Virus record (IMG/VR): IMGVR_UViG_3300036715_004471
Location: 124,001 to 188,000 of that record
Reading direction: 5' to 3' (one strand)
DNA length: 64,000 nucleotides
The notes below the pieces were generated by a model. That model did not search any database and had not been told where the DNA came from. It saw only the letters and a list, made by a program, of their open reading frames with translations. Positions 6,543-58,800 of the stretch are shown piece by piece. Position 1 is the stretch's first letter, and every line of letters begins with the position of its first letter. The position numbers and the translations under genes are program-made.

Positions 6543-7157
6543 AAATAAGATTAAAGTATTCATTTTGTTAATGAATGTCTGCTTGTTTTTGAACTTGGAC
6601 AAAGGTTGCAATGGCATTTTTAAATCGATAGGTTCTTCGTATTTTATGACTCTATCGGTTGGGACAGAGGTTTTAGCAACCATTAAAATTGACTCCTGAT
6701 TATCCCAATTTGATGTAAGAGAATACATCTTATCTGGCTCTTCAATCAGCAGAAATTCTTTACGTATTGACAATGGTTTTAATATCTTTTTATCAAGATC
6801 AAAAAGCATACTATGAGACCGTATGTAAGAACCACAACGAGTACATTTACTAGTGGCATACATTATATGCTCGGATAGATAATCTGTCAAGGCATTAATA
6901 TCTGAAATAATTTTGTTGCTTTTGTGTAAAATTCTCAAGTTAAGAGTGCCGTCAGAATAATTAACTTTCAAATCCATATCCACCATTTGGGGCGTAACTA
7001 CTGGATGAAGAATAATACCTTTTCCAGCCTTTGTTATAGGATGTTCCGCCATTGGATCATCAAGTTTCCTAGTAATAACCCTAAAAAATGTATTCTCTTG
7101 ACAAGAAAAACAAGGATTATTATAGGTGATAAAATCTTTAAGCGTTAGAAGTTTCAT
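6537..7157 (-). CDS. Long-form CxxC family protein with C-terminal tag (KMNTLILFS)
   Basis: CFSC and CTRC motifs; shared C-terminal motif. Confidence 0.75.
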   Translation of the reverse strand: MKLLTLKDFITYNNPCFSCQENTFFRVITRKLDDPMAEHPITKAGKGIILHPVVTPQMVDMDLKVNYSDGTLNLRILHKSNKIISDINALTDYLSEHIMYATSKCTRCGSYIRSHSMLFDLDKKILKPLSIRKEFLLIEEPDKMYSLTSNWDNQESILMVAKTSVPTDRVIKYEEPIDLKMPLQPLSKFKNKQTFINKMNTLILFS

Positions 7158-8242
7158 TATTCTTTATTGTGCAAATAAGCCATGATGAATTGTTCAATAT
7201 CTCCATCTAAAACCTTATCAGCATTTCTCACTTCGCAATCTGTACGATGATCTTTAACCATTTGGGATGGAAACAAAACATAAGATCTAATCTGATGACC
7301 GAATGAATTATCCTGCATGCTGGTGAAATACTTTTCTTTATCAGCGTTTTTCTTTTTCATTTCTACTTCATAAAGTTTAGCTTTCAACACTTTCATAGCT
7401 ATTTTGCGATTAGTGTGTTGATCTCTTTCTGATCTAGAATTGATTACGATACCAGTGGGAAGATGCTTTAATCTAACGGCGCTTTCTACCTTATTAACAT
7501 TTTGACCACCTGCACCGGATGCGCGCATAGTAGTAATTTCAATATCTTTGTCATTGATTTGAACATCAATAGTATCTTCGATATCTGGGAGTACAGCTAC
7601 CGCAGCAAAAGAGGTATGACGAGCATCGCCAGCATTGAAAGGAGAATTTCTTACTAACCTATGAACTCCAGCTTCTCCTTTCAGATAACCATAAGCATAA
7701 GGTCCATTAATGCGAATAGAGACTGAATCGGTACAAATTCCACCGTGCTCTTCTGATGGTTTCATATCCAGAAGCTCTATTTTGAAATTGGACATATCGG
7801 CATATCGAGAATACATTCTTAAAAGCATAGTAGTCCAATTTGCAGCTTCTAATCCGCCTGCACCAGCATTGATAGTTAAAATGGCTGGACTATCATCCAC
7901 AGGATTATTGAGCATTTGTTTGAATTCAAAATCACATAAGTCTTTATGGAAATCTTGAATTTGATTTGCTAATCCATCCAATTCTTCGGGAATAGATTGT
8001 TGACATTCTATATAAAAATCAGTTTGATCTTTGAAGAAGGAAAGTTTGCTTAACAATTCTGATACTTTTTGACGCTCTTTTAATGTAGCGGCGGCTTCTT
8101 TAGGATTATTCCAGATATTAGAATTATTAATAGCATTATCCAATTCCATTAATTTGTTTTTGTTAATGGAAACGGGTATCATCTGATGCAAATAGTCAAT
8201 TTTCTCTTTACATGATTCAATTAGTTGGGTTGTTGTTTTCAT
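7157..8242 (-). CDS. prfB: Peptide chain release factor 2
   Basis: SPF recognition tripeptide (VRNSPF), GAGGQNVNK and [10 protein letters not shown]. Likely ATG at 8242 after AAAGGA; no internal frameshift. Confidence 0.95.
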
Positions 8243-8301
8243 AATGGGCGTCCTTTCAAGGCACACAACGCAGGTAATATTTGTAGGGCGCCGATGGGAC
8301 G

Positions 8302-9021
8302 TCAAGACATAATGACCCAGGAGTCAAGCCTGTTGAATAATCTTTCTTTATCTTCAAAGTTAATTCGATTATTAAGCAGTGGCATTTCTCTTTCTAAGAG
8401 TTTGGGCTCAAAATCTTCTTTTGAAGCTTCCTCATCGGTAACAGTATAATGATGAAAAACAGTTTTCTTCTCTTCATTATCCAATACGATTACGTAAACT
8501 TTTTCCAAATTCCCAGTTTTATTCTTGACCACATAATATTCATCTCTGTTAATAATTCCATTGTCTTGAATATACTTTACTAATAGTTGTTGTTTTGATT
8601 CATATTCATCAAGTTTAATTAATGGGGTGGATCGATAATAACATCCATAATAAATATCAATTTGATGATCATATCCCAAATCACTTATCGCTCGTGGATT
8701 ACACAGATAATAAAAGTACAGACTTTTCTGATCTTTTGCCATTTTCTGTGCAGATAAAGTATTGAAATTAGCTACATAGTTATCTCCATCTTTTTTAAGA
8801 AGCATAACTATTTCTTGAGATTTTTTAGTATTTCCAAAACCAGAATTAGGCTTATTCTTAGAGTATTCATGCTCTTCAAACCTGATAGTATCATCATTTG
8901 ATTGAGACGCTTTAAAAAGCTTTTTAACATAATCTAATTCGGAACCTCCCCATTGCATATACAATGTAAGCGGTTCTTGACAAATGGGGCAAAGTTTATT
9001 GAAATTCAGGAAGTCTTTCAT
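8302..9021 (-). CDS. Long-form CxxC family protein with C-terminal tag (RLDSWVIMS)
   Basis: N-terminus [14 protein letters not shown]; variant of the tag. Confidence 0.75.
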
Positions 9022-9023
9022 AT

Positions 9024-9638
9024 TTATCCAAAATTAACGATTGTTTTGATTCTATTGAATACTTTATCTTTATTCTCTTGATCTATCTCTATCAAAGGCA
9101 AACTAATAGGTTTAGCATATTGCTTATTGGTCGTGTAAATATTAGTGGATAGTCTTATCATATCATTTTGAACCCAAAATTGGGAAACATTATAACACTC
9201 CCAATCAATCATAATAGGTTCGATTAAAGCACTAGCATGATCATTTACATTAAGTTTAAGATTGGTTGTTGTAATATAATATTTGCTGTAACATTTTTTA
9301 TTACAGCAATGTAACTCAACATTAACTTGAGCGTTTGTAATAACTCTTAATATCCCTATTAACTCAATATTAGCATCTATTAAATCATCTGCCTCATTGG
9401 CTTTTTCCATGTGAAAAAGATTAGAATTAACATCTATATGACAATTCTTATCAATGGATAAACTGGGAGAAGTGTATTTTACTCTAAATGAGAAAACATT
9501 GTTGATTAATCTAGAATTAATTAGCGGAAGGTTAATATTCCAGTAAGAACGTCCCTTCAAATAAGGAATTAAAGAATCTCCACAGATCGCGCAATGCGAC
9601 TTGATATCTAATAAATCTTTAATCTTACTATAAATCAT
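9024..9638 (-). CDS. Long-form CxxC family protein with C-terminal tag (RIKTIVNFG)
   Basis: CAIC and CCNKKC motifs; shared C-terminal motif. Confidence 0.75.
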   Translation of the reverse strand: MIYSKIKDLLDIKSHCAICGDSLIPYLKGRSYWNINLPLINSRLINNVFSFRVKYTSPSLSIDKNCHIDVNSNLFHMEKANEADDLIDANIELIGILRVITNAQVNVELHCCNKKCYSKYYITTTNLKLNVNDHASALIEPIMIDWECYNVSQFWVQNDMIRLSTNIYTTNKQYAKPISLPLIEIDQENKDKVFNRIKTIVNFG

Positions 9639-10205
9639 TTAGGAAAATGTGATAAGAGTTTTAATTTTGCGTAGCGTTTTTTCTTTATCTATCTTTCCAA
9701 AATTAATTAGCGGAAGTTCCGCTAATCCGCCCTTAGTAAGAGTATTATAAGGCGGCTCAATTATAATGTCAAGGACAATGGTTTTTTTATATTTGTAATC
9801 ATTAACAACTTTAAGATAAGATTTTTCATCTTTATGAAGTTTGAACGCTAATATTTCTAATTCTAGCGGACTAATGTATCCATCTTCGTTAAAAATCAAT
9901 GAAGAAGTTTTTATTAACAACCCGCACTCGCATGTCTTGTATATCTTGATTTTTTTAGAATTGAGGGCAACAGCAAGTTTTGATGATTCTTTAGTCCAAG
10001 AGGGAACTTGATAAGAATTATCTAATAAACCTATAGTAACATTTCTAAATAAAGACTGAGTAACCTGCAAGTTAATTTCATTATTTTGATATTCATAATT
10101 GAGCGACTCATTATGTTCACATCTAAAATCTTTGAAAGATAAGATTACAGGATCTTCGCACAGCATACATTGAGTATGAGATGTCATAAACTCAATCAAT
10201 TTCAT
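9639..10205 (-). CDS. Long-form CxxC family protein with C-terminal tag (KIKTLITFS)
   Basis: CMLC and CEC motifs; shared C-terminal motif. Confidence 0.75.
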   Translation of the reverse strand: MKLIEFMTSHTQCMLCEDPVILSFKDFRCEHNESLNYEYQNNEINLQVTQSLFRNVTIGLLDNSYQVPSWTKESSKLAVALNSKKIKIYKTCECGLLIKTSSLIFNEDGYISPLELEILAFKLHKDEKSYLKVVNDYKYKKTIVLDIIIEPPYNTLTKGGLAELPLINFGKIDKEKTLRKIKTLITFS

Positions 10206-10206
10206 A

Positions 10207-10857
10207 TTAATCTTCGTAAAACTTTTCGAAAACTTCTTTGGTTAAACCGGCATCAATCAAGATTGGACGATCATCTTTGGTTCCCCAAGAAGATATTCTT
10301 GCAATATCTCCGGGCATCAATTTGAACTTTTCTCCAACACTTTTCATTTCCTTATAGATGTCTGATTTGGAAATCTCTTCGAAGTGCTTAGGTTTACTTT
10401 TGGAGGATTCAGAGACATCTTTAAGACCATATCTGATAGCATCTCCAAAGTCATTGAAATCTATATCAGTCATTTTCTCAAAATCCTTTTCTGTAATCTT
10501 TTCTAAATAATGAGTTTCAAGCCAAGAAAAATTTTTGGCTTGACTAATAATCTCATTAAGATACTTAGATTTCATCTTAGGATTTGATTCCGCTTTATTT
10601 TGAGCGATTCCTTTATCATTCTTAGCCATCTTGATAATAGTTTTATCAGGAGTCTCATACACTATTCTAGAAGAACCGGAAGAAAGATGTTTTAAATTTT
10701 TCTCAGCATATTTAGTTCTAGCTTGATAGGTTTCTAATTTCTCGAGATTCTTTAATACAGTTTTGAGATTAGATGAATCTGCTGGCAACTCTTCCGATTC
10801 TTGAGTGGCAAGAGAGTAAAATATATCAACCAATCTAATAACTCTGTTTATTCCCAT
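10207..10857 (-). CDS. Protein-kinase-like fold protein
   Basis: SSGSSRIVY glycine loop, IIKMA lysine, QNKAE helix-C glutamate, GDIARISSWG catalytic-loop-like segment, LIDAG (DFG-like). Confidence 0.65.
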   Translation of the reverse strand: MGINRVIRLVDIFYSLATQESEELPADSSNLKTVLKNLEKLETYQARTKYAEKNLKHLSSGSSRIVYETPDKTIIKMAKNDKGIAQNKAESNPKMKSKYLNEIISQAKNFSWLETHYLEKITEKDFEKMTDIDFNDFGDAIRYGLKDVSESSKSKPKHFEEISKSDIYKEMKSVGEKFKLMPGDIARISSWGTKDDRPILIDAGLTKEVFEKFYED

Positions 10858-10902: not shown

Positions 10903-11442
10903 ATGACAAATAGATTGAGCACTCAAGAATATTACGATCTCATTAAAAAATTGATTGAACAGCAGTATACTGATGATTCAGAACCGGAATCAACCACATC
11001 TTATTCTGATGGGTGGATTCCTGCTTCACCTGAAATTAAACAAAAAATGAAGCTACTGGCGGATGAAGGAACTGTTGATTTAACTAATGTAAAAAGCAAC
11101 AAAATTAAAGAACTTATTATTCAATCCAAAAATAAGAGCGTTAAGAGTGGAATCAAAATTGGCGATTTTCTAATAAAAATTACACGTTCTGAATGTTACA
11201 ATCCTGATATGTCAGACTTAATTGTTGACATTTGCGTTTATGAAGAACAACATAAAACCAAATCAGGGGCACCGGCTAAATTATTATTCAAAATAGATAC
11301 TATTAAAGATAGTAGATTCACACAATGTTCTTGGAACAGTTATTTTAATCAATTCAAATCTGCTAAAAATGTACCGATTAACATATTGGTAGAAATTGTT
11401 AGGTGGCTCCGGGCGGTTAAAAAATTAACTGCATTTCTTTGA
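10903..11442 (+). CDS. Hypothetical protein with C-terminal tag (AVKKLTAFL), paralog of 6109..6542
   Basis: Likely ATG at 10903; shares an ID...D.RF....W...L.EI...KL..FL pattern with the frameshifted gene. Confidence 0.75.
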   Translation: MTNRLSTQEYYDLIKKLIEQQYTDDSEPESTTSYSDGWIPASPEIKQKMKLLADEGTVDLTNVKSNKIKELIIQSKNKSVKSGIKIGDFLIKITRSECYNPDMSDLIVDICVYEEQHKTKSGAPAKLLFKIDTIKDSRFTQCSWNSYFNQFKSAKNVPINILVEIVRWLRAVKKLTAFL

Positions 11443-11588: not shown

Positions 11589-11620
11589 GAAAAAGAATCA
11601 GAGCGCTCTGATTCTTTTTC
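11589..11620. repeat. Perfect 32-bp palindrome with no loop, between convergent genes
   Basis: gaaaaagaatcagagc|gctctgattctttttc. Confidence 0.9.
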
Positions 11621-11701: not shown

Positions 11702-12178
11702 TTAAATCAACTGGTTTCCTGACAATATTTGTGCTAATCCTGATGATGTTATGATATCTTTTTGTAATGTAGGATCTGCATGTGCTCTATTATCTTGATG
11801 TTCTGCTCTCCATCTATTCATTGCTGATTGAGTTCTTGGTCCGAAAACACCATCTGCTTTACTGCCGCTCATACTATCTGGATATAATTTGATTAAAGCT
11901 TTTTGTAATTCTGGATTAATGCGTGATCCATGAGAAATTGGTTTATATACTTGTTCTGAATGTTTCTCTTTAGCTTCTTGAGCTGGATATGGAAGTGGTT
12001 TATTACCTTTTATTTGAGTAGAAGGTAGCTCTACTCCAAAACCAGGATTAAATGAATTTAGTTCATATCCACCATGATCCATTTGTGCTAAGTTTTCAAG
12101 AAAAGCTCTTCTACCACCGTAGACAGCTAATCTTTCAAACAATTCTGCTTTTTTGAGGAGAGCCTTTGTGTCAACCAT
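11702..12178 (-). CDS. Protein with shared N-terminal leader and C-terminal peptidoglycan-binding-like domain
   Basis: LQKALIKL...ADGVFGPRTQSAMNRW resembles the PG_binding_1 signature DGxFGxxT. Confidence 0.65.
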   Translation of the reverse strand: MVDTKALLKKAELFERLAVYGGRRAFLENLAQMDHGGYELNSFNPGFGVELPSTQIKGNKPLPYPAQEAKEKHSEQVYKPISHGSRINPELQKALIKLYPDSMSGSKADGVFGPRTQSAMNRWRAEHQDNRAHADPTLQKDIITSSGLAQILSGNQLI

Positions 12179-12211
12179 TTTAGTTTAATCCTTCTTTAAT
12201 ACACTACTTTT

Positions 12212-12385
12212 TTATACACTATTATGCATGTTTAGTAAATGTTCAGTCGCTCTTTTGATTTGTTTATCTTGCTCCGATTGTTCATCTGCCTGGGCTAATG
12301 CATACAAGAATCCCTTGCGAATACCATATGTAGCTAATTTTTCAAATAAATTTGCTTTTATTAGAATAAGTTTTGTGTCAACCAT
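12212..12385 (-). CDS. 57-aa protein sharing the 32-aa leader of 11702..12178; not in the ORF track
   Basis: MVDTKLILIKANLFEKLATYGIRKGFLYALAQ...; GAAGG RBS. Confidence 0.75.
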   Translation of the reverse strand: MVDTKLILIKANLFEKLATYGIRKGFLYALAQADEQSEQDKQIKRATEHLLNMHNSV

Positions 12386-12429
12386 TTGTACCTTCTTTAA
12401 TTATTATGCCGTATAAGTCAGACATTTAA

Positions 12430-12951
12430 TCAACTTCTATTAATCCAATCCGGATTATTATACTCATTATCACAATTAGCATCATGAACACCACTGAGAT
12501 CAAATGGGTTGATTAACATTTGTTGTAGCTGTATTGGCAAATGCTTGAAACAATTACACTCACAACCACAATGACATTTTCTACATGTAATTGTTTTGCA
12601 AGAAATGTTTTTAATATCCGCCAGCAAATTCCATATATTAAGCCTCTCCACAGGTAAGGAGAGGGTAGGGGGACCGTAATTATTTTGTAAAACGGTAACC
12701 ATCCCCTGCTTGACAAACATTACAACGTCCGCAAGTTGGCGGTTGGTAAAATCTTGCAAAGTTTGACGCAGGACCAAAATCCTCTGATTATTCAAGTGGA
12801 CTAATACTGGATAATTTGGATCCACTGATACACGTAGATCAAATTCTGCATCGCTCATAACTTCATTGAATTCCAATTGTGTTTTCAAATTGTTTAAAGT
12901 TATTGCCGAGATGTCGGCGTTAATAAAAATGATTGCAGAGGGTAATTCCAT
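12430..12951 (-). CDS. Hypothetical protein with Cys-rich segment
   Basis: Likely start at MELPSAIIF; contains CKTITCRKCHCGCECNC. Confidence 0.6.
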   Translation of the reverse strand: MELPSAIIFINADISAITLNNLKTQLEFNEVMSDAEFDLRVSVDPNYPVLVHLNNQRILVLRQTLQDFTNRQLADVVMFVKQGMVTVLQNNYGPPTLSLPVERLNIWNLLADIKNISCKTITCRKCHCGCECNCFKHLPIQLQQMLINPFDLSGVHDANCDNEYNNPDWINRS

Positions 12952-14724: not shown

Positions 14725-15207
14725 ATGATAGATAGAAAATATCTAAAAGTAAAGCCTAGCAATTTAGATGGTAGTGGATTGTTTACTACTGTCAAAATAA
14801 ATGCCAGATATCCTATTATAGAAGTAACTGGCGATATTTTTGATTTATCTACTGTGCCTGATCATCCAGCTGTAATACAGGTTACTCCTAAGTTATTTAT
14901 AGGACCATCTGGAGGACCTGATGATTATATTAATCATAGTTGTAATCCTAATTGTTTTATCTCTATTATAGGAAATAGGGCAATTTTATATTCGTTGTAT
15001 GTAATTTCTCCAGACACAGAATTAACATTTGATTATTCTAGCGGCTCATCTGAATCATTAGATAGTTGGAAAATGAATTGTTCTTGTGGCGCAGTAACTT
15101 GTCGTAAAATCATCAGTGGATTTCAATATTTGACAGATGAGCAAAAGAAAGTTTTGCTGGATTTAAAGGCGGTTCCTCCATTTATCACGGATGGAATATT
15201 TAGATGA
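14725..15207 (+). CDS. SET-domain lysine methyltransferase with post-SET motif
   Basis: GSGLF, INHSCNPN, ELTFDY and CSCGAVTCR motifs. Confidence 0.9.
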   Translation: MIDRKYLKVKPSNLDGSGLFTTVKINARYPIIEVTGDIFDLSTVPDHPAVIQVTPKLFIGPSGGPDDYINHSCNPNCFISIIGNRAILYSLYVISPDTELTFDYSSGSSESLDSWKMNCSCGAVTCRKIISGFQYLTDEQKKVLLDLKAVPPFITDGIFR

Positions 15208-16025: not shown

Positions 16026-16661
16026 ATGTCAGGACTTCAATATTATATTGTAGATACGGAAACTACAGGGTTAAAAGCCAACTTCCATGAAGTTACAGAG
16101 GTAGGCATTATCCGCGCCAAAGATCGTGTTCAAATTCATAGATGCGTTAAATGCGTGTATCCAGAACGCGCCAATTTTGATGCGTTAGCTATTACTAAGA
16201 AAACTATGGCAGATCTTGAAAGAGGGCATGAAAAATCTGATGTAATAGCAGAATGTAATAAGTTTTTTGAAGAAGATGGCACTTCACCTGCACATAGAGT
16301 TATTGTGGCTCACAATGCTCCTTTTGATAGAAGATTTCTTCATGCTATGTGGGAGAGCGAAGGTCTAGAATTTCCTGCCCATTTATGGTTGGATACTATA
16401 TCTTTAACTAAAGAGTATGCCAAGAAAATTGGTTTAATCAAGCCCAAGGTAGGTTTACACGCCGCTTGTGATATAGTAGGAATAAAGAAACTATCAGATG
16501 CTCACAATGCAAAAGTAGATAGTAGAAACTGTTATTTATTACATCGTAGTTTGACGGAAGAGAAAAAGATAGACTATTTACCTTTCATAAAAACAGCTGT
16601 CCATACAATAGCAACCAATCAAGATTATGAAGGATTAGATTTATCATTACTTGATGATTAA
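16026..16661 (+). CDS. DEDDh 3'-5' exonuclease (DnaQ-like)
   Basis: VDTETTG, AHNAPFD and AHNAKVD motifs. Confidence 0.9.
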   Translation: MSGLQYYIVDTETTGLKANFHEVTEVGIIRAKDRVQIHRCVKCVYPERANFDALAITKKTMADLERGHEKSDVIAECNKFFEEDGTSPAHRVIVAHNAPFDRRFLHAMWESEGLEFPAHLWLDTISLTKEYAKKIGLIKPKVGLHAACDIVGIKKLSDAHNAKVDSRNCYLLHRSLTEEKKIDYLPFIKTAVHTIATNQDYEGLDLSLLDD

Positions 16662-26417: not shown

Positions 26418-26894
26418 TCAAATCTCAAAATTACTTCCACTTATATCAGTTTCATGATTGGTAATAGTTGTTCCCGCCCAACCTTCTTTGTCCATTTGAG
26501 ATAATCTATTGAACTCTTTTTCCAAAGCTGCAATTAACTTAGCGTTCAATGCAGCCAATGCACTTTTAACAATGCTACTAGCAGTTTTATCATTAACTAA
26601 TGATCCTGTAATTTTTAGACCGCTGGTTTGAGGATTTATTTTCCATTTACCACCAACCAAATTGGCGTTAGTAATAAAACTATTAATTGCCAAGCCGCCT
26701 CTTATATTAGCTGCTGCTATTTTGTTAGCCGCAGCTTGTAAAACAGTTGCTAAGCCAGGATTTTGTCCAAGTATAGTGTTAGCTGTAGGTCTAACAGCCA
26801 AAGTTACACCAGTACTATCTACTTCTTTAGCTGCTTGAGCTTCTTTTCTAAGTTTATATTCAAAATGATTTGCTAAAATATCTATTTGTCTCAT
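26418..26894 (-). CDS. Hypothetical protein with a leader ending KEAQ (possible virion protein)
   Basis: N-terminus MRQIDILANHFEYKLRKEAQ. Confidence 0.6.
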   Translation of the reverse strand: MRQIDILANHFEYKLRKEAQAAKEVDSTGVTLAVRPTANTILGQNPGLATVLQAAANKIAAANIRGGLAINSFITNANLVGGKWKINPQTSGLKITGSLVNDKTASSIVKSALAALNAKLIAALEKEFNRLSQMDKEGWAGTTITNHETDISGSNFEI

Positions 26895-45004: not shown

Positions 45005-46414
45005 TTACTTTCTTCTATCTACTACGCCACCCATAAGCTTACCAAATGCGGAGGATTTAGCAGCGATCTTTTCCTTGATTTTTTGTGCAGCAGATACGGT
45101 ATCATTAGTGCCAGTATCTAAGTGTAAAGTCAAGTTTCTAGATTCATCCTTGGTCTTGACCTTAGATTGTAATTCTTTTGTTTCACTCTTAAGTTGCTCA
45201 ACTCTAACAGAAGGCAAGCCTAATCCAGAGAACATTGAATATACTTTCACAGTATCTTCTGGCGCATCAACAACATACATACCTTTGAATACACCCTTTG
45301 GGTTTCCGCATAAATCATTAATCATACTGCTGGCATAATTGACGCTTGAAGCTGGAATTTTAGACCAAACATTTTTGTTTGCAGCAATAATAAATCCAAC
45401 ATATTTTGATTGTTTAAGATCAAAGCCTTCAGCTAGAAGATTACCTGACAAGTTATTGATAACAGCTTCTGCAATGGCGGTATCCTCTTGATAGTTATCA
45501 ACTGAGAATTCTCCATAGACGCTTAATCCTTCACCATCAATGAAAAGTTTAGACCATTCCATTGGATCTAGTGCTTTAGTTGAAGAGGGCATAGAAGAAA
45601 GAGTATTAAACATATCAATTGGATCTACAATGGCTCTATTGGCTACGCCATAGAAATCCATTTGACCAACATGATGATAGATAGTTTCTATCTTAGCATT
45701 ATCTACAACAATCAAATTGTTTACTTTTTTGGATTGTGCTAGCTTAGATAATTTGGACAAAGTTTCTAAAGCATTACTTTTGGTTTGAGAGTCCTCCGTA
45801 TCCATTGGTAGTACAGTAATGACAATTAGTGGTTTGCCCAAATCTGACAATAAATCCACTAATGTTTCGCATGAGCCGGCGCCAGAACCACCGCCAAGAC
45901 TCAGGCACAAAAGATTTACTTGAGAATTACTTAGTTTATCATTCACTAATTCTAGTATTTCTGCACGATGTGCTTCGGCAGCAGCTTTTCCAATTTCAAT
46001 TTCTTTAGCCGCCCCACCCAAACCATATTCTAGCAACAATTTGTTGGAATCTGGAACATCAATAAACTTAAGATCTTGCATAGCAGTATTGACCACTATA
46101 GAGTCATATCCTAATTTATAGAATGCTTCTGCAATTCTGGAACCAGCTTGACCTGAGCCTAATACTCCTAATGCTAGGCTTCTTTCTTTTTTAGCTACTA
46201 TTTTTGATGCCACTTTTGCCTCTTGTTGTTTTGCTTGGTTTTTAGCTTTTAAGACAGCTAGTTTATCTGTACTAACCTGCGCTGTTTCTAAATTTTCTGC
46301 TTCTTTTACTTGGGCTATTTCTGATCTTAATTTCTGAATTTCAGCTTCTTTATCAGTCATATCGTCAACTATCTCCTCTGGCTTATCATAATTCATGAAA
46401 TGTCTTATTGACAT
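45005..46414 (-). CDS. Tubulin/FtsZ-family GTPase with N-terminal coiled-coil extension
   Basis: GSGQAGSRI, VNTAMQD, GGAAK, SLGGGSGAG tubulin signature, VVDN. Confidence 0.9.
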   Translation of the reverse strand: MSIRHFMNYDKPEEIVDDMTDKEAEIQKLRSEIAQVKEAENLETAQVSTDKLAVLKAKNQAKQQEAKVASKIVAKKERSLALGVLGSGQAGSRIAEAFYKLGYDSIVVNTAMQDLKFIDVPDSNKLLLEYGLGGAAKEIEIGKAAAEAHRAEILELVNDKLSNSQVNLLCLSLGGGSGAGSCETLVDLLSDLGKPLIVITVLPMDTEDSQTKSNALETLSKLSKLAQSKKVNNLIVVDNAKIETIYHHVGQMDFYGVANRAIVDPIDMFNTLSSMPSSTKALDPMEWSKLFIDGEGLSVYGEFSVDNYQEDTAIAEAVINNLSGNLLAEGFDLKQSKYVGFIIAANKNVWSKIPASSVNYASSMINDLCGNPKGVFKGMYVVDAPEDTVKVYSMFSGLGLPSVRVEQLKSETKELQSKVKTKDESRNLTLHLDTGTNDTVSAAQKIKEKIAAKSSAFGKLMGGVVDRRK

Positions 46415-51858: not shown

Positions 51859-54800
51859 TTATATTGGAGTTGGAGATGGTAGATAAGGAACAAAGTTGGA
51901 GCTATGAGCTGTTGGAGGTGCAGCACCAACTGGATTGTTATACGTCATAACCAAACGAGACATATAACAAGTTGCTTCTGTACTTACTGTTTCTCCACTT
52001 AAATACATCGCATAAATATAATCATCAGCGCCTGATAAGAATTGCTCTTTTAAATCATCAGAAACTACATAAGTAATGGTATCATTAGTAGTAGATAGAT
52101 ATGTTGATACGCCAACAAGGGGCAAATAACCACTATTAGAAACATTTAACAATCTTACTTGTGCTTTTTCACCCGCAGTACTACTTTTTAAAATTGCTTC
52201 AAAAGTAATAGACTCTAACCCTTCTAATATATATTTATCAAATCTAAAAGTACAAGCTCCAAAATTTATTTCAGTACTACCAACAGTTGCATCTCTACCG
52301 GAAGATGTATAAATGTACATTGGGTTTTTGTACATAAAACTAGGATCTAATAATCCATATCCATCTGTTTTTGGAACTCTATCTGCGTCTGGGATACCAG
52401 TAGAGAATGGAATGACACCTACCATATCAAAAATGAATTGATAACTTAAACCGCTTCCATTACTAGTCAACACTGTTCCGAAAGCGCCCACATCATTTAA
52501 TCCGGTACCGCCATGAATAATTGGTAAGACACCTGTTATGTCATTTTGCAAGTCTACTAAAGCAGATGGTCCACCATCTACAGCTCCGCTGAATACGCTG
52601 ATAAGTTTCAACATATTCTGCATTTTACCAGAATCTATAAATAATGTTTGATTGTTGAATCCGCCTTTTTTCAAGAAAACATTTATTTGTATTTTAGTAC
52701 TTAAGGTTTGCAAAACGGCGTCTTGATATAAGTTTGTGAAATTAAGTGTTAACAATCCAGTATTATAATCAATCGAAACACCAATTTTTCCATCTACGAT
52801 GGCTCCATCATATCCATCTACACTTAATCCATTTGTATTTGGAGAGAAAGATTGTACCGCTACAGAAAATCTTAATTGATCATTTGTTAAAGCATCATTA
52901 GTAACTAATGAACAATCAGCAAATTTCATGGCAGGGAAGCCTAAACGAGTTCTTCCGTCGCCAGTATAATCAGAAATGAAATCATCCAAAATATTGATGG
53001 TGCGTTCTGAGCCAAATAAACCATCAGGAATTTCTAAAACTATAGTACCAACTTCAAAATCTACTTTATAGAAATTACCATCTGGTCTATGTAGTTCGCC
53101 GCCGCGACCAATAATAAGATTGTTTGGTACAAATATATCAACACGACCTTGATCAAAATCAGGTCCCGATTCATACACGCTAATACTTACTCCATCTATA
53201 TGACAACTATTGTTTTGAAATCCAGAAAGACTGGTGAAAACAGTAGGAACACCTCTTGGTTTACTGTTAGTAACTATTAAAGATTCATCCCAAGTCAATT
53301 GTTTTTGGATTGACCAAACAACGGGGCTCAAATAGAAATCATGATCTGCAAAATATCCATCAGATAAGAAAATATCTGGAGCCAAATGAACAACTGTTGT
53401 TCTATCAACAGTAACAGATGAATAATCATCCGCCCTATCTATAAACTCTTCTAATTTGAATCTAATAACATTGAATCTAGTACCGATTTTTGTAAATGGA
53501 TTAGTTGAAGGACCTGGGTAAGTGCTAGTTGGAGAGTTGGTTAATACATTTCTATCTATATAGTTCTGTAATAGATATCCATCTGTGTAAGTAATATGAA
53601 AATCTCCATCAATATCTGCCCTCAACATTTGCATTAACACATCGCCAGTCAAAAAGACTTTTCTAAGAGTTAAAACATCTGTCAAAGAATCTACAGAAAT
53701 GATATCAAATCCTCCATAATTTTCTTGATTTGAAGGCAACAAAAGAATAAGTTTGAAAGAACCTAATCCAATAATAGTATTAAAAGAAACGCTAGCGCTA
53801 GTAAATTGAGCTAGCCTATTATCATTTGGATTAGCTACTAAAACGCCATCATTAGCACTTTCTAATACTGCACCAGTATCAGGATCTACTAACTGGAAAT
53901 TGATGCCGAAAGCACTACTAAATGGTTTAGTATAAGTATTGTAACCATTAGTAAAAGTAGTAGTAATGCCGTCGGTAACTAATATAGTATCAGTTGGTAA
54001 ACCAGTATTTAAATCGTAATTTAGATATGTATTTAAGATATTCAAATCATTGACATCTATAATTCCATTACCATCAACATCGCCTAAAATGCATGAAGCT
54101 AATTTGGCTGATGCTATTCTAAAGTAATTATTGGTATTACTTGCATGTGGAAAAATTTGAGCCCCAACAAAATCTCCATTCAATAAATTAGTTACTAATC
54201 CACTGACTGAAGAATCAAACCTAACAACATCTGTTGAATCATCTACAATTTTGATAATCAATTCGTCATGCACCATAGTAGCGGAATACAAATTGGAATT
54301 GATTATAGACGAAATAGAATCGAAGAATTTGATATTTTTATCTGAAATTGCCCCAATGATCAATGGCTCAGAAGCTTTTTCCAAATTAGTAATATCAATG
54401 GTATTTAACAGTTTGATACTTGGAACAAATTCTTGTCTAGACAAAACAGGATTACCTGTACGCTGATCTGGTATTGGGGTATTTTCTTCTATAGATGCCG
54501 CAACAACTGCTCTAAACACACCGTTACCAGTAAACTGTAAATCTTCCAAAGAATAGTCTATTGTAGTTAAAGTATTTGGATCTTGAGATGTTTTAGGAAG
54601 AACAACTCCATGACCTGTTTCATATATTTGACCATCTGATATTTTTGCAGCATCAGTCCAAACTCTGAACCATAAATCTTGATCCGGAATATCTACCCAT
54701 AGAGTACCAGTGAAAGTTGTAATTCTAGAATCTGGTACCCTATCAGACCCAACAGCTATCAAAATATCACATTTGTTTGCTGAGCCCGATCTTTTAATAG

Positions 54801-55854
54801 TAACAGCATAATAACTACCAACAGTTAAAACATTACCAGAAGCAACAGAGCTGTTACTAAATATAAAATCAACAGGCTGAGGAACTGTATTTAAAATTGT
54901 TCCTGAAGACTGTAATGTATTATAATTAACACTAAGCTGAGCAACTGGAATATTAGATGGTGAAAAATCTATTGGAAGGTTGGGTGCGATATCAGATGCG
55001 CATTCAATAGTAGATTGCAATGGATAAATACTTATTACTAAGTCGCCATTCCAAACTAAATCATCTTCATTTCCAACCTCTGTATTTCTAACAGAAAGTA
55101 ATAGATTGATTTTTTGAATGTTATTGGTAGAAGCAATGAATTTTTGTCCAATTTGTGTAGTTACATCTCCATTTAATAAAACATGATTATCTAATGGAGT
55201 AGTAAAAATACCCAAAGTATCTATGTTGTAAAATGGTAGAGCAGCACTTAATAATGCTTGTAAAGATAAATATCCTTCCAAAAAGAAATCTCTAAAGAAT
55301 AAATTTGGCTCAACGTCTTGGGCAATCATTAGAGGACTTCTGGAAAGTGAAAATGGATTGGCTTCACGAATTACAACTTGACCGCCCAGATTCAATGACA
55401 AAGTAGGGTCGCCTATGAAATCATTAAAAAGAATTAATAAGATATTGGTAAAATGTTTATGGCTAACTTGTATTTCATTAGTTCTGAAATAAAAAGTTTC
55501 ATATTGTAAATTACTTTCAAAATCTAAACCAATAATACAGATTTTGATAGCTTTTTTTCCAGCAACCTGAGATTTGTTTAATTCAATTTCTAATTGATTT
55601 CCAAAATTGCTATCTGTAGGCTGATATTGTGCTCGAACGATTGTACCATCTAAAAAGCCGACAGACAATGCAGAATCAAAAATGATATTTTGTTCCAATA
55701 CTTCGGGCAATACACCAGAACCTACATGGTTATTGATTATCCCAGAAGTTATAGTATTATTGTAGTTTTGTTCCAGTGTTAAATCGGTATCGTCAACTTG
55801 TTGAGCATCGAACCAGATATTTTGTGGAGCAGAAATAGGGCTTCTTTTTGTCAT
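51859..55854 (-). CDS. Large virion structural protein (baseplate/tail) with dockerin-like Ca-binding repeats
   Basis: 1331 aa, beta-rich. Contains GDVDGNGIIDVNDL, ADIDGDFHITYTDG and a fibre-like GVLPIIHGGTG motif. Confidence 0.7.
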   Translation of the reverse strand: MTKRSPISAPQNIWFDAQQVDDTDLTLEQNYNNTITSGIINNHVGSGVLPEVLEQNIIFDSALSVGFLDGTIVRAQYQPTDSNFGNQLEIELNKSQVAGKKAIKICIIGLDFESNLQYETFYFRTNEIQVSHKHFTNILLILFNDFIGDPTLSLNLGGQVVIREANPFSLSRSPLMIAQDVEPNLFFRDFFLEGYLSLQALLSAALPFYNIDTLGIFTTPLDNHVLLNGDVTTQIGQKFIASTNNIQKINLLLSVRNTEVGNEDDLVWNGDLVISIYPLQSTIECASDIAPNLPIDFSPSNIPVAQLSVNYNTLQSSGTILNTVPQPVDFIFSNSSVASGNVLTVGSYYAVTIKRSGSANKCDILIAVGSDRVPDSRITTFTGTLWVDIPDQDLWFRVWTDAAKISDGQIYETGHGVVLPKTSQDPNTLTTIDYSLEDLQFTGNGVFRAVVAASIEENTPIPDQRTGNPVLSRQEFVPSIKLLNTIDITNLEKASEPLIIGAISDKNIKFFDSISSIINSNLYSATMVHDELIIKIVDDSTDVVRFDSSVSGLVTNLLNGDFVGAQIFPHASNTNNYFRIASAKLASCILGDVDGNGIIDVNDLNILNTYLNYDLNTGLPTDTILVTDGITTTFTNGYNTYTKPFSSAFGINFQLVDPDTGAVLESANDGVLVANPNDNRLAQFTSASVSFNTIIGLGSFKLILLLPSNQENYGGFDIISVDSLTDVLTLRKVFLTGDVLMQMLRADIDGDFHITYTDGYLLQNYIDRNVLTNSPTSTYPGPSTNPFTKIGTRFNVIRFKLEEFIDRADDYSSVTVDRTTVVHLAPDIFLSDGYFADHDFYLSPVVWSIQKQLTWDESLIVTNSKPRGVPTVFTSLSGFQNNSCHIDGVSISVYESGPDFDQGRVDIFVPNNLIIGRGGELHRPDGNFYKVDFEVGTIVLEIPDGLFGSERTINILDDFISDYTGDGRTRLGFPAMKFADCSLVTNDALTNDQLRFSVAVQSFSPNTNGLSVDGYDGAIVDGKIGVSIDYNTGLLTLNFTNLYQDAVLQTLSTKIQINVFLKKGGFNNQTLFIDSGKMQNMLKLISVFSGAVDGGPSALVDLQNDITGVLPIIHGGTGLNDVGAFGTVLTSNGSGLSYQFIFDMVGVIPFSTGIPDADRVPKTDGYGLLDPSFMYKNPMYIYTSSGRDATVGSTEINFGACTFRFDKYILEGLESITFEAILKSSTAGEKAQVRLLNVSNSGYLPLVGVSTYLSTTNDTITYVVSDDLKEQFLSGADDYIYAMYLSGETVSTEATCYMSRLVMTYNNPVGAAPPTAHSSNFVPYLPSPTPI

Positions 55855-55861
55855 CGTTTTC

Positions 55862-58800
55862 TCATTTAGTATACTGGATAAACACCCTAGAGTTGGCTGG
55901 TTTCAAGACTCGTATTAACTTCTCCAAGGCTTCTTTGGACTTTATACTACTACTAACTATACCTAAAGAATCTATTATATTTACTGAAAAATCAAACAAA
56001 CCTGTTTCTCTATTCTTTAATATAGCAAAATCGGTGTTGATCGATGACACTATGTCAGAATTTAATAAGTATGTCGTAAACAGATCCATTGTTACAGGGA
56101 ATACTGTGCTCAAATTGGAAGAATAGTTAACATCTATAGCCTCACCATAAGGAGCATAAATCGGTCTTGACATGTCACTTATTCTTAGGTTATCAATTAA
56201 ACTAAAAGTTGGGAATTGATTATCAAATTGGGTTCCTATAAACAATTGATTAATGGAATCTTTGAACTTGATATTTCCTAAAATGGTATAACCATCTCCT
56301 ACTATAACGGATCCCATAACAGTAGGTGAGATGCCACTAATAAGACCAGTTCCAAATAGAACATCACTATATTGATATCCATCTAAAAACAATCTCATTT
56401 CATCAGTAGATGGTCCACTATTTACACGATAACTAGCTTTGATTCTATGCCAAGTATTTCTGGACCAGAATGTGGGCGCCTTAATTACATAGTCTTTATT
56501 AGAAGCAGTAATAGCAAAATTGATATATCCAGTTTCATCTTTGAAAATGGCTATACGATCACCTTGTAATCCTTTAGGAACATACTTAACAGTAATATGT
56601 GATTTGTGGTATGGTAATCTTCTATTAAGCCTCACAACTTGTGTATTAATATTTTGATTATTGTTTTCTGTAGATTGATATGTTACAATAACTAGTACAT
56701 TATTTGTTGGTAATAATTTACCTAAATAAATAGTTTTCATATCTGTACTAATACTACCATTAACGAAATAATCTGTATTAGTTGGGTCACCGGCTATTTT
56801 AACAGTAATTACTTGTAAAATAGGATGTGAGACAACTACTGAATTATCACCAATGCTTGTACTGGTTTCCTGCGTAGCATTTTGTGTGTCAATTTCTATC
56901 TTTCCGCCAGCAAAATAATCTATACGGGGGTCGCCACCTTTCAATTGAACACTTAAAATTTGACTGGCGGGAGCAGATAGTTTTAATGAAACATTATTCA
57001 CACTTACCACATCTTCCACAACAGCTCCAAAAGCATCAAAATAAAATCTCTTATGAGGATCATTAGCCGTGTCGAACAATGGACTCATCCAAAACTCTAT
57101 AGTACCTTCTTTTCTAGTATTCAAAATACCTTCATTTGGCAAAACAATGGGCTCATCTAATAAAACCAAACTGTTACCAAAATTCTCGTTTACTACCAAA
57201 GAAGAATAAAAATGATTCTTAGTTGGTGTTGGAGAAATATAAAAATCAGCTTGATTAGTAAATGGAAAACTATTAAAACTAATTAACATCAAAGTATTAG
57301 AATCTTTGGTCAAAGCTTTCAATGAATTAAAATCTTTAGTAATAGAGCGCTGATTAGATGGAATACTCTCACCAATTCTAGTATCAGTTAACATTACTGA
57401 GTATATTTTAACTTGATCCATTAAGCCGTGTAACTGCAATTGACTGTTATAATCACTGCCCAAGAATACCTTAGCACGAGTTGGTTCTAAGTTTATTCTT
57501 GTATAAGTGAAATATTCAAATTCATAAAACCCCTTACTTAAATAATATGGAGTTCCTGGTTCATTCTTAATTTCAAAAGTAAAGAATCCATTTTGCAATC
57601 CACTTCTATAAGCATTAACATTCAAAATTTGATAAGTACCGTTATTGAAAATTGGTACATCGCCACCTAATGTTGGTTCTACAAATAAAGTTTTTCTGTC
57701 TGAAGAAATACCTGTAATCAAATAAAATCCGGCAGCATTTGAAGGAGCAGAGATAACTAAGTAATTATTTATATCCAAGTCACTAAACAATCTATTATCA
57801 TCTGTGACAGAGTTAATGGCACTTTGATACAAGGTATCACCATATCCAATTGAATAGCTAAATCTGATGATTGGTGCATAACCATCATTATTTTCTGCAT
57901 GAATGATAGAGTATTTTTCTTTAACCGTAGCAATACATGCCGCCCTATTAAGTACCAATGGTTGAGCAACTACATTAACAAAATTAACAGAAAGGTATTG
58001 ATTTACGGAATCTAATGTACCATAATCAGTAAAAATAATTATCTCATTAGATGGTCCGCCAATTGTTGTTCCATCAATAGTAACTTGAACGGCAGTGGAA
58101 AAATCTACATTAGTTCCCGCAACAGTGGCGCTCAATGTTCTGCCAGTTAAAGAAAGAGAAGGTTGATCAACCGTTAAATTAACAGATGAATTAGATGTAT
58201 TAATAGCAGTATTTGGTAAAATTACTTTTATAATATCTACTTCGTCTAAAGAAATTGGTGGCGGTAATTTAGTCATCAAAATATTTTCTACACCACTACT
58301 CCACACATAATAATTTCTCTTTATTTTTCTATGATTTATTCCAAGTGTTCTGATAAGAATTAAATCATTCATAATAACTTTATCAGATATTGTTAATACA
58401 TTATTGAAATTGATATCTTTAGATACACTATATGCTGGACGTAAAGCTCTAACTCCTGGTATTTCTTGTTCAGTATTGGTATTATATATTGTATACGAAG
58501 TATTACTAATATCAATTGGTAAATTATCATTGATTATTAATGAATTCCCTGACACTTGCAAAATGGTGTATATATTTTGCAACGTCATGTTTTCGATTTT
58601 GATTAAATAACCCACTTGTACTTCTACTGATGAAAAATCTAATGAAGAAGAGGTAACTATATTTGAATCGGTAAAGCCATTTATATCTGAACCAACAATA
58701 AATGCGTTAATTGTTGATACTGCAATGTTGGGGGACACATCAATATCAGATACTACAGTAAAATGAGTTCTATTAACAGAAAATCTACCATTAGATAATG

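What the first reader, a model, noticed from the sequence alone, without database searches (positions are those of the whole stretch)
11702..12385. Shared N-terminal leader ending in (L/E)AQ: possible cleavable virion-targeting propeptide
Seen: two adjacent genes share MVDTKALLKKAELFERLAVYGGRRAFLENLAQ and MVDTKLILIKANLFEKLATYGIRKGFLYALAQ, then diverge completely (a PG-binding-like domain versus a short tail). Both have attaaagaagg upstream. Looser helical leaders begin 26418..26894 (MRQIDILANHFEYKLRKEAQ) and the kinase-like protein (MGINRVIRLVDIFYSLATQ). Established: T4 internal proteins and phiKZ head proteins carry N-terminal propeptides removed by the prohead protease. Inference: this is a second, N-terminal address code for packaging proteins into the head.
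Basis: partly seen in the sequence, partly recalled or inferred. Interest (0 to 1): 0.6.

Follow-up and report, generated by a model that had tools for sequence, protein, structure and literature searches.

The report
Conserved N-terminal handle on huge-phage proteins
Two neighbouring small genes of a 446-kb uncultivated phage begin with the same 32-residue two-helix module, which turns out to be a widespread but undescribed N-terminal "handle" carrying exchangeable tails in related huge phages; it is not a genome-wide head-targeting code, and nothing shows that it is cut off.

Summary
ORFs A (11702..12178, minus strand, 158 aa) and B (12212..12385, minus strand, 57 aa) share residues 1-34 at 65% identity and then diverge. 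A ends in a PG_binding_1-like domain and B in a short acidic tail.

The leader is a helix-turn-helix hairpin (helices 4-20 and 23-32). A profile of it finds 338 protein clusters in metagenomes. It always starts at residue 1 and is followed by a Pro/Ser/Ala-rich linker and variable cargo: PG-binding-like domains in about half, helical domains, or almost nothing (45-64 aa "handle-only" proteins like B). No Pfam or PHROG family matched any of these proteins outside the PG-binding domain.

Each phage genome checked has only one or two such genes, always at one syntenic locus. In this genome only A and B carry the module. The nearby kinase-fold protein (10207..10857) shares helix 1 only. The other proposed leader (26418..26894) does not match, and LAQ-type motifs near N-termini occur at chance level.

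No Glu-type cleavage motif is conserved at the module's end, and no T4- or HK97-type prohead protease family was found.

My best reading (0.42) is a retained docking/assembly handle that tethers variable cargo to one conserved partner. A T4 CTS-like packaging signal remains a live rival (0.22). Neither cleavage nor virion location can be tested with these tools.

The parts
11702..12178 (-). Gene A, 158 aa: N-terminal handle, disordered linker, PG_binding_1-like domain
   Evidence: ORF. AF2 model gives H4-20 and H23-32, residues 34-56 below pLDDT 50, and a confident C-terminal domain. Orthologues at 42-72% identity.
12083..12178 (-). Coding region of the A handle (residues 1-32)
   Evidence: Nearly invariant positions are M1 K9 F14 E15 L17 A18 G21 R23 F26 L27 Q32.
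11984..12082 (-). Linker of A (residues 33-65), predicted disordered
   Evidence: pLDDT 39-50. The 30 residues after the module are Pro/Ser/Ala-rich across the family.
11717..11983 (-). PG_binding_1-like domain of A (residues about 66-154)
   Evidence: It is the only PG_binding_1-like match in the genome.
12212..12385 (-). Gene B, 57 aa: handle plus a 25-residue, mildly acidic tail ('handle-only' paralogue)
   Evidence: A 54-aa counterpart exists in L006. Leader dN/dS is about 0.12 between the two. Contigs of three other samples cover parts of B and the A-B junction.
12290..12385 (-). Coding region of the B handle (residues 1-32)
12200..12227 (-). Conserved upstream DNA element before gene A (GCATAATAnTGTATAAA..GTAGT); it overlaps the last codons and the stop of B
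   Evidence: Present before the leader gene in L003, L005, L006, L012, L015, L017 and L018. It is not a reused motif in this genome: 7 hits against 6-11 in shuffles.
12190..12200 (-). ATTAAAGAAGG upstream of A (ribosome-binding-site-like)
12391..12410 (-). ATTAAAGAAGG plus a truncated copy (GGCATAATAAT) of the upstream element before B
10207..10857 (-). 216-aa protein-kinase-fold core protein whose N-terminal helix is homologous to helix 1 of the handle
   Evidence: phrog_4301. 654 homologues, the listed ones at about 70% identity. AF2 pLDDT 81.9. Foldseek hits are kinases and APH enzymes at prob 0.97-1.0.
10801..10854 (-). Helix 1-like N-terminal helix of the kinase-fold protein (residues 2-19)
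   Evidence: hhalign and shuffles. Helix-1 HMM gives 18.9 bits, third and last hit in the genome. An independent leader HMM detects it in L019.
11589..11620 (.). 14-bp-stem terminator-like hairpin (called on the minus strand) closing the B-A unit, between A and the convergent gene at about 10903..11442
12430..12951 (-). Cys-rich 173-aa protein, immediately upstream of the leader gene in every locus that reaches that far
   Evidence: No Pfam family.

Best explanation
The shared N-terminus is an autonomous helix-turn-helix hairpin of about 32 residues. It defines a family of small, fast-evolving proteins encoded at one fixed locus in a clade of roughly 350-500-kb uncultivated phages. That locus follows a Cys-rich protein gene and lies two or three genes from a kinase-fold core gene.

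The hairpin is the constant part. Behind a flexible Pro/Ser/Ala-rich linker it carries exchangeable cargo:
- a peptidoglycan-binding-like domain (A, and about half of the family);
- long helical domains;
- only a short, often acidic tail (B).

I infer that the hairpin is a docking/assembly handle that stays on the mature protein. It would bind one conserved phage partner, or bundle with the homologous helix on the kinase-fold protein. The variable cargo would thereby be tethered to a single site.

Shown: A and B come from an old tandem duplication, and B is a maintained handle-only version. Also shown are the module itself, its modularity, its restriction to one locus, the helix-1 homology and purifying selection. 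Inferred: retention of the handle, docking as its function, and the identity of the partner.
For: - The module is real and modular. There are 338 clusters at E <= 1e-3, 40 at E <= 1e-10, always starting at residue 1, with lengths of 45-469 aa.
- The nearly invariant columns of the family lie only in the handle, and include charged and polar positions K9, E15, R23 and Q32. This suggests a specific interface.
- The hairpin is predicted with heptad-like hydrophobic spacing, and it does not pack on the cargo domain.
- The Pro/Ser/Ala-rich linker has a median of 86 residues between Q32 and the PG-binding motif. That fits an anchor-linker-binding-domain tether.
- At least six clusters of handle-only proteins exist, and in L018 one is the only family member seen on the 12.8-kb contig.
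- The B leader is under purifying selection (dN 0.19, dS 1.54).
- There are one or two copies per genome, and the locus is syntenic in about a dozen contigs.
- Helix 1 is shared with a highly conserved kinase-fold neighbour.
Against: - No partner has been identified.
- The one co-folding test (kinase-fold protein with B) gave no verdict.
- The handle has only modest model confidence (pLDDT 57-60).
- Retention of the handle in the mature protein is not shown.
- The same anatomy is what a capsid-targeting sequence would look like.
- A PG-binding domain on a protein with no export signal still needs a route to the cell wall, and this model does not explain one.
Confidence: 0.42

Rival explanations
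1. Capsid-targeting leader. The handle docks A-type, B-type and possibly the kinase-fold protein onto the prohead core, so that they are packaged and later ejected. It may then be removed by a maturation protease near Q32. This would be a functional analogue of the T4 CTS and internal-protein locus.
For: - The layout of tandem genes with a constant leader and hypervariable cargo matches the description of T4 internal proteins, where only the CTS is conserved (PMC3012670).
- Acidic handle-only peptides exist.
- A PG-binding domain and a kinase-fold enzyme are both plausible ejected proteins.
- Q32 is nearly invariant.
- [SAG]-x-E is about twofold enriched just after the module (48 of 157 vs 22.9 expected), and both A (GYE) and B (ADE) have one.
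Against: - Only 1-2 genes per genome carry the module, and no recognisable head protein does.
- 69% of the family lack a Glu-type motif at the boundary, and position 33 is Glu in only 19%.
- The long flexible linkers after the module are unnecessary for a cleaved signal.
- No T4- or HK97-type prohead protease family was detected (weak evidence, since the PF03420 control rang nowhere).
- The locus sits among dUTPase, HD, SET, exonuclease and release-factor genes rather than structural genes.
Confidence: 0.22
2. Lysis or cell-wall accessory. A is a separately encoded cell-wall-binding subunit, and the handle is the helix that assembles it with a catalytic or membrane partner at lysis. B modulates that assembly.
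For: - The C-terminal domain of A matches the cell-wall-binding parts of endolysin PHROGs (phrog_2649, phrog_1493).
- It is the only PG_binding_1-like domain in the genome.
- No catalytic domain is fused to the module in any of 140 relatives.
Against: - About half of the family has no PG-binding domain. In several long contigs (L019-L021) the only member found in the 12.7-kb locus is a helical type.
- No endolysin catalytic domain was found with SLT, Phage_lysozyme, Amidase_2 or phrog_2649.
- No protein other than A, B and the kinase-fold protein carries the helix.
- No holin or spanin was found next door.
Confidence: 0.1
3. Plain paralogy with no address or docking role. The N-terminus is simply the conserved core of a small protein family, and B is a decaying remnant of a partial duplication.
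For: - The motif is confined to a duplicated pair in this genome.
- The B tail is unalignable even with its counterpart in a close relative whose neighbouring gene shows dN of only 0.05.
- A complete relative lacks B altogether.
Against: - The B leader is under purifying selection (dN/dS about 0.12).
- Handle-only proteins recur in at least six clusters and can be the sole member seen on a contig.
- The handle is the most conserved part of the family while everything behind it is swapped.
- Helix 1 is shared with a non-paralogous kinase-fold protein.
Confidence: 0.1
4. Export signal (Sec or Tat) that takes the PG-binding domain to the periplasm. The RRAFL stretch in A resembles the twin-arginine motif, and AQA in B resembles an AxA signal-peptidase site.
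For: A reads G-R-R-A-F-L, and B reads A-Q-A followed by D. A PG-binding domain needs access to the wall.
Against: - There is no hydrophobic core. The maximum 19-residue Kyte-Doolittle mean is 0.33 for A and 0.70 for B.
- Charged residues are spread throughout the module.
- The second Arg is not conserved (position 24 is K, Q, H or S in relatives).
- The residues after the motif are polar.
Confidence: 0.02

Closest known systems
T4 capsid targeting sequence (CTS) and the hypervariable internal-protein (IP) locus
   Same: A short conserved N-terminal leader precedes unrelated, fast-evolving cargo in adjacent small genes. The leader is the only part conserved between phages (PMC3012670).
   Different: The T4 CTS is far shorter than this module (about 10 residues, from my own knowledge) and is followed by a Glu-type cleavage site (also from my own knowledge). 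Here the module is a 32-residue hairpin with a long flexible linker, and no conserved Glu site. No T4-type protease was detected, and no evidence of packaging exists.
N-terminal propeptides of phiKZ/SPN3US-type giant-phage head proteins
   Same: They are N-terminal extensions on proteins of very large phages. Two SPN3US propeptides are of similar size, 20 and 24 residues (PMC10052503).
   Different: Those are cut after A-X-E. Most are much longer (111-254 residues). They occur on eight different head proteins per genome. Here there are one or two proteins per genome, and the motif is absent in 69% of the family.
Anchor-linker-binding-domain tethers (a modular endolysin with its cell-wall-binding domain, or a TonB-like anchor with a Pro-rich spacer)
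   Same: A small anchor module, a Pro-rich flexible spacer and a PG_binding_1-like domain.
   Different: No catalytic domain and no transmembrane anchor. The order is reversed relative to most endolysins. Half of the family carries no wall-binding domain.
Small N-terminal two-helix dimerisation/docking motifs (LisH, or the RIIa docking domain of protein kinase A)
   Same: About 30-40 residues, two helices joined at a Gly-containing turn, located at the extreme N-terminus, and here associated with a kinase-fold protein. This resemblance is recalled from general knowledge.
   Different: No sequence match: Pfam gives no hit on the module. The oligomeric state is untested.

Membership tests
T4-type capsid targeting sequence / internal proteins | Leader followed by a prohead-protease site with Glu at P1 (L/I-x-E) | tested here: not met
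   [LI]-x-E within 13 residues after the module in 13 of 157 members, against 16.9 expected. Position 33 is Glu in 30 of 157.
T4-type capsid targeting sequence / internal proteins | A gp21-type (Peptidase_S77) prohead protease in the genome | tested here: inconclusive
   PF03420 finds nothing, but the control set also rang nowhere. PF04586 finds nothing with working controls.
T4-type capsid targeting sequence / internal proteins | Conserved leader on diverse cargo in adjacent, rapidly evolving genes | tested here: met
T4-type capsid targeting sequence / internal proteins | Proteins are packaged in the head and processed | not testable with these tools
   No cultured relative and no proteome.
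phiKZ/SPN3US-type head-protein propeptides | Cleavage after [S/A/G]-X-E at the propeptide boundary | tested here: not met
   Present within 13 residues in 48 of 157 (31%) and exactly at positions 31-33 in 30 of 157. It is twofold enriched but absent in 69%. The motif is taken from PMC10052503.
phiKZ/SPN3US-type head-protein propeptides | Many different head proteins per genome carry propeptides | tested here: not met
   Only A and B (plus helix 1 of one protein) in 446 kb, and one copy in a complete 452-kb relative.
PG_binding_1 (PF01471) domain, C-terminal part of A | Profile match over Pfam's gathering score | tested here: inconclusive
   Window protein scores 19.3 bits (cut-off 23), and PG_binding_3 scores 23.5 (cut-off 24.6). 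Relatives reach 2e-12 in 26 of 140. D109, G113, P114 and T116 are invariant in the 12-sequence alignment.
PG_binding_1 (PF01471) domain, C-terminal part of A | Helical fold like solved PG-binding domains | tested here: met
   Foldseek top hits are SleB N-domain (prob 0.92, TM by target 0.61), TtsA, Zn DD-peptidase 1lbu, CtpB and SleC. The profile against PDB sequences finds 1lbu residues 26-74 at E = 0.035.
PG_binding_1 (PF01471) domain, C-terminal part of A | Binds peptidoglycan | not testable with these tools
   Needs a binding assay.
Sec / Tat signal peptides | Hydrophobic h-region after the n-region or twin-arginine motif | tested here: not met
   Maximum 19-residue hydropathy is 0.33 (A) and 0.70 (B).
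Protein-kinase-like fold (the 216-aa neighbour) | Bilobal kinase fold | tested here: met
   AF2 pLDDT 81.9. All top Foldseek hits are protein kinases, MTR kinase or APH(2''), with E from 5e-4 and prob 0.97-1.0.
Protein-kinase-like fold (the 216-aa neighbour) | Sequence-profile membership of a kinase family | tested here: not met
   No kinase Pfam family at E <= 0.1. Only phrog_4301, of unknown function.

The most novel reading that the evidence does not exclude
The hairpin is a new, clade-wide protein address tag of huge phages. It would recruit a kinase-fold enzyme and a changing set of cargo (wall-binding, helical and acidic mini-proteins) to one site, most excitingly the prohead, so that they are co-injected with the DNA. 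That would be the first CTS-like packaging signal recognised in uncultivated 350-500-kb phages, and a ready-made tag for loading proteins into such capsids.
Probability: 0.2. Interest if true: 0.7.

Novelty: new variant of a known kind. Interest (0 to 1): 0.45.

Why it matters
Huge phages are known almost only from metagenomes, and most of their genes have no function assigned. This module gives a compact, sharply conserved sequence handle with these properties:
- 11 nearly invariant positions;
- 338 clusters, with no Pfam or PHROG entry found for the module;
- one fixed locus per genome;
- exchangeable cargo;
- a link to a core kinase-fold protein that is about 70% identical among the contigs listed (654 homologues in all).

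Whether it is a docking handle or a packaging signal, it marks a place where these phages swap effectors quickly. That is the behaviour expected of host-interaction or counter-defence genes. The handle is short enough to test directly by pull-down, fusion or structure.

Tried and rejected
- **Co-folding of the kinase-fold protein with B:** no verdict (score 0.01). This is not evidence either way.
- **Cultured phages and genomes:** blastn and tblastn against cultured phages found no relative of the locus or of A. The GTDB genome scan with the leader profile found none. No organism or host can therefore be named.
- **ESM Atlas look-alikes for B and for the A leader:** nothing usable, only generic helical hairpins.
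LAQ, [LE]AQ and K.AQ occur at chance. A..F..LA gave only 3 hits, one of them A.
- **The protein at 26418..26894:** no leader match.
- **Sec/Tat signal idea:** rejected on hydropathy.
- **The upstream element as a general phage promoter:** rejected, with 7 hits at up to 2 mismatches against 6-11 in shuffles. The genome's enriched upstream 7-mer is TGATATA instead.
- **Search for a lysin catalytic domain:** SLT, Phage_lysozyme, Amidase_2 and phrog_2649 found none.
- **Sequencing runs:** only DNA contigs from microbial mat, aquatic, sediment and lake metagenomes, and no RNA. Expression and transcript ends could not be examined.
- **Laying the contigs:** pieces covering parts of B and the A-B junction occur in three other samples, and no form lacking B was seen. 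Coverage is patchy.
- **Cluster name look-up:** no names.

Full report
**Setting.** The window is bases 124,001-188,000 of a 446,541-bp virus record with 38.7% G+C. Near-identical DNA occurs in microbial-mat, aquatic and sediment metagenomes. The window encodes ribonucleotide reductase, helicases, PhoH, a weak tubulin/PhuZ-like protein and a release factor. No cultured phage resembles the locus.

**Observation.** ORF A (11702..12178) and ORF B (12212..12385) both lie on the minus strand, 33 bases apart.
- Their first 34 residues are 65% identical (E = 8e-13), and nothing aligns after that.
- At DNA level the similarity covers only codons 1-32 and is full of synonymous changes. dS between the two leaders is saturated at about 1.46, so the duplication is old.
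- ATTAAAGAAGG precedes both start codons, at different spacing. It occurs only three times in the whole genome.
- A terminator-like hairpin (11589..11620) closes the unit.

**Anatomy of A and B.** AlphaFold2 with 12 homologues gives:
- helix 4-20, a turn at Y-G-G, and helix 23-32 (pLDDT 57-60);
- a disordered stretch at 34-56;
- a confident helical domain from about residue 70 to 150.

That domain weakly matches PG_binding_3 and PG_binding_1 and the wall-binding parts of endolysin PHROGs. Its best structural neighbours are the SleB N-domain, TtsA, the Zn DD-peptidase, CtpB and SleC. The profile finds the PG-binding domain of 1lbu. B is the handle plus 25 mildly acidic residues. Neither protein has a hydrophobic segment.

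**The module is limited to this locus in the genome.**
- HMMs built from 2, 11 or 158 leaders find only A and B among all ORFs of at least 40 aa.
- A helix-1-only profile adds exactly one protein, the 216-aa neighbour at 10207..10857.
- Profile-profile alignment places leader columns 3-20 on residues 2-19 of that family, in register from the N-terminus. The score is 26.6, against 7.6 +/- 2.0 (maximum 15.1) for 200 column shuffles.
- An HMM trained without that family detects the helix in L019.
- That protein folds confidently (pLDDT 81.9), and its structural neighbours are protein kinases, MTR kinase and aminoglycoside phosphotransferases. No sequence profile calls it a kinase.
- It is a core gene, with 654 homologues; those listed are about 70% identical.
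- The candidate at 26418..26894 is not a match.

**The module is widespread in related phages.**
- Orthologues of A are 42-72% identical.
- Pattern scans found leader genes in viral and metagenomic contigs with quite different C-terminal parts.
- A profile search of 1.84 billion representatives found 338 clusters at E <= 1e-3 and 40 at E <= 1e-10. The match always begins at residue 1, and protein lengths run from 45 to 469 aa.
- Nearly invariant positions are M1, K9, F14, E15, L17, A18, G21, R23, F26, L27 and Q32. No column behind the handle is conserved across the family.
- The 30 residues after the module are Pro/Ser/Ala-rich.
- About half of the members carry the D-G-x-x-G-P-x-T signature. 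PG_binding_1 is hit in 26 of 140 (best E = 2e-12), and no enzyme domain occurs.
- No PHROG or Pfam family matched any part of these proteins other than the PG-binding domain.
- Six further clusters are handle-only proteins of 45-64 aa, four of them with acidic tails.
- Variants with a doubled helix 1 or a repeated helix 2 exist.

**Synteny.** In every locus long enough to judge, the order is dUTPase, then a Cys-rich protein, then one or two leader genes, then Zn-ribbon-like and convergent genes, then the kinase-fold protein, then a release factor.
- A complete 452-kb relative has one leader gene. Two fragments have two each.
- The 12.8-kb contig behind L018 shows only a 56-aa handle-only gene.
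- L019-L021 each show only a helical-type member in the 12.7 kb fetched.
- A DNA element (GGCATAATAnTGTATAAA..GTAGTAT) precedes the leader gene in many of these otherwise divergent loci. It is not a general motif of this genome.

**Selection.** The window was compared with the close relative L006.

| Region | dN | dS | codons |
|---|---|---|---|
| Cys-rich neighbour | 0.05 | 0.77 | 174 |
| A leader | 0.02 | 0.30 | 19 |
| B leader | 0.19 | 1.54 | 32 |

The two B tails are unalignable. B is therefore fast-evolving, but its handle is under purifying selection. Contigs from three other samples cover parts of B and the A-B junction.

**Bearing on the propeptide idea.**
- For: the logic of a constant leader with swappable cargo in tandem genes is what is described for T4 internal proteins (PMC3012670). 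Q32 is nearly invariant. [SAG]-x-E is twofold enriched after the module.
- Against: known giant-phage prohead proteases cut after Glu (A-X-E for SPN3US gp245; PMC10052503). Yet position 33 is Glu in only 19% of members, and 69% have no such motif nearby.
- Against: only one or two proteins per genome carry the module.
- Against: long flexible linkers follow it.
- Against: no T4- or HK97-type protease family was detected (the first with an uninformative control).
- Against: the locus sits among nucleotide-metabolism and translation-related genes.

**Conclusion.** The leader is an undescribed N-terminal hairpin module of a huge-phage clade.

The reading that best fits the anatomy is a retained docking/assembly handle that tethers exchangeable cargo to one conserved partner, possibly together with the kinase-fold protein that shares its first helix (confidence 0.42). 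A CTS-like packaging signal is the main rival (0.22). A lysis-accessory role (0.10), plain paralogy (0.10) and an export signal (0.02) follow.

The single co-folding job gave no verdict and is not used as evidence. Cleavage, virion location and the partner remain untested.

Noticed in passing
window 7157..8305 (-): A phage-encoded class-I peptide chain release factor (PCRF 2.7e-46 and RF-1 2.2e-38). It is conserved in the same syntenic block in relatives (L018-L022). Among ORFs of at least 150 aa in the genome, stop codons are TAA 200, TGA 166 and TAG 33.
   Followed up: partly
window 12200..12227, and L003, L005, L006, L012, L015, L017, L018 upstream of the leader genes: A conserved non-coding element (GGCATAATAnTGTATAAA, a few bases, then GTAGTAT) precedes leader genes across phages whose proteins are only 30-70% identical. 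It is not a reused motif in this genome. It may be a gene-specific promoter or operator.
   Followed up: partly
window 12430..12951 (-); L013 1141..2646: A Cys-rich protein (C-x-x-C-x-C-G-C-x-C-N-C cluster) is always immediately upstream of the leader gene and has no Pfam family. In L013 it is 501 aa, with a Pro-rich spacer and a beta-rich C-terminal domain that looks fibre- or adhesin-like.
   Followed up: partly
window 10207..10857 (-): A minimal (216 aa) protein-kinase-fold protein is extremely conserved (about 70% identity among the listed contigs, the longest about 500 kb). It is unannotated apart from phrog_4301.
   Followed up: partly
window 8302..10205 (-); L018 4277..8528: Arrays of small paralogous proteins with N-terminal C-P-x-C zinc-ribbon-like motifs flank the kinase-fold and release-factor genes in the related locus L018. 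The adjacent window ORFs at 8302..10205 were not inspected for the motif and have no Pfam hit.
   Followed up: no
window 14725..15207 (+) and 16026..16661 (+): A SET-domain protein (9e-11) and an RNase T-like exonuclease (8e-15). Both are conserved in the same block in L019-L021.
   Followed up: no
window 45005..46414 (-): A tubulin/PhuZ-like protein (phrog_4733, 2e-7). Its only cultured-phage match is Bacillus phage G gene 138, at 23% identity.
   Followed up: no
window 51859..55854 (-) and 55862..62971 (-): Two giant ORFs of 1331 and 2369 aa with no PHROG match at E <= 1e-5.
   Followed up: no
whole genome G000: Shine-Dalgarno-like motifs are rare upstream of genes (AGGAG before 31 of 669). 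The most enriched upstream 7-mer is TGATATA (32 genes, 6.7-fold), possibly the phage's own promoter element.
   Followed up: partly
P0075, P0087, L020 2797..3630; P0021: Some family members carry a duplicated helix 1 in front of a complete handle. One carries a second copy of helix 2 about 60 residues downstream of the first. The two helices therefore behave as separable units.
   Followed up: partly
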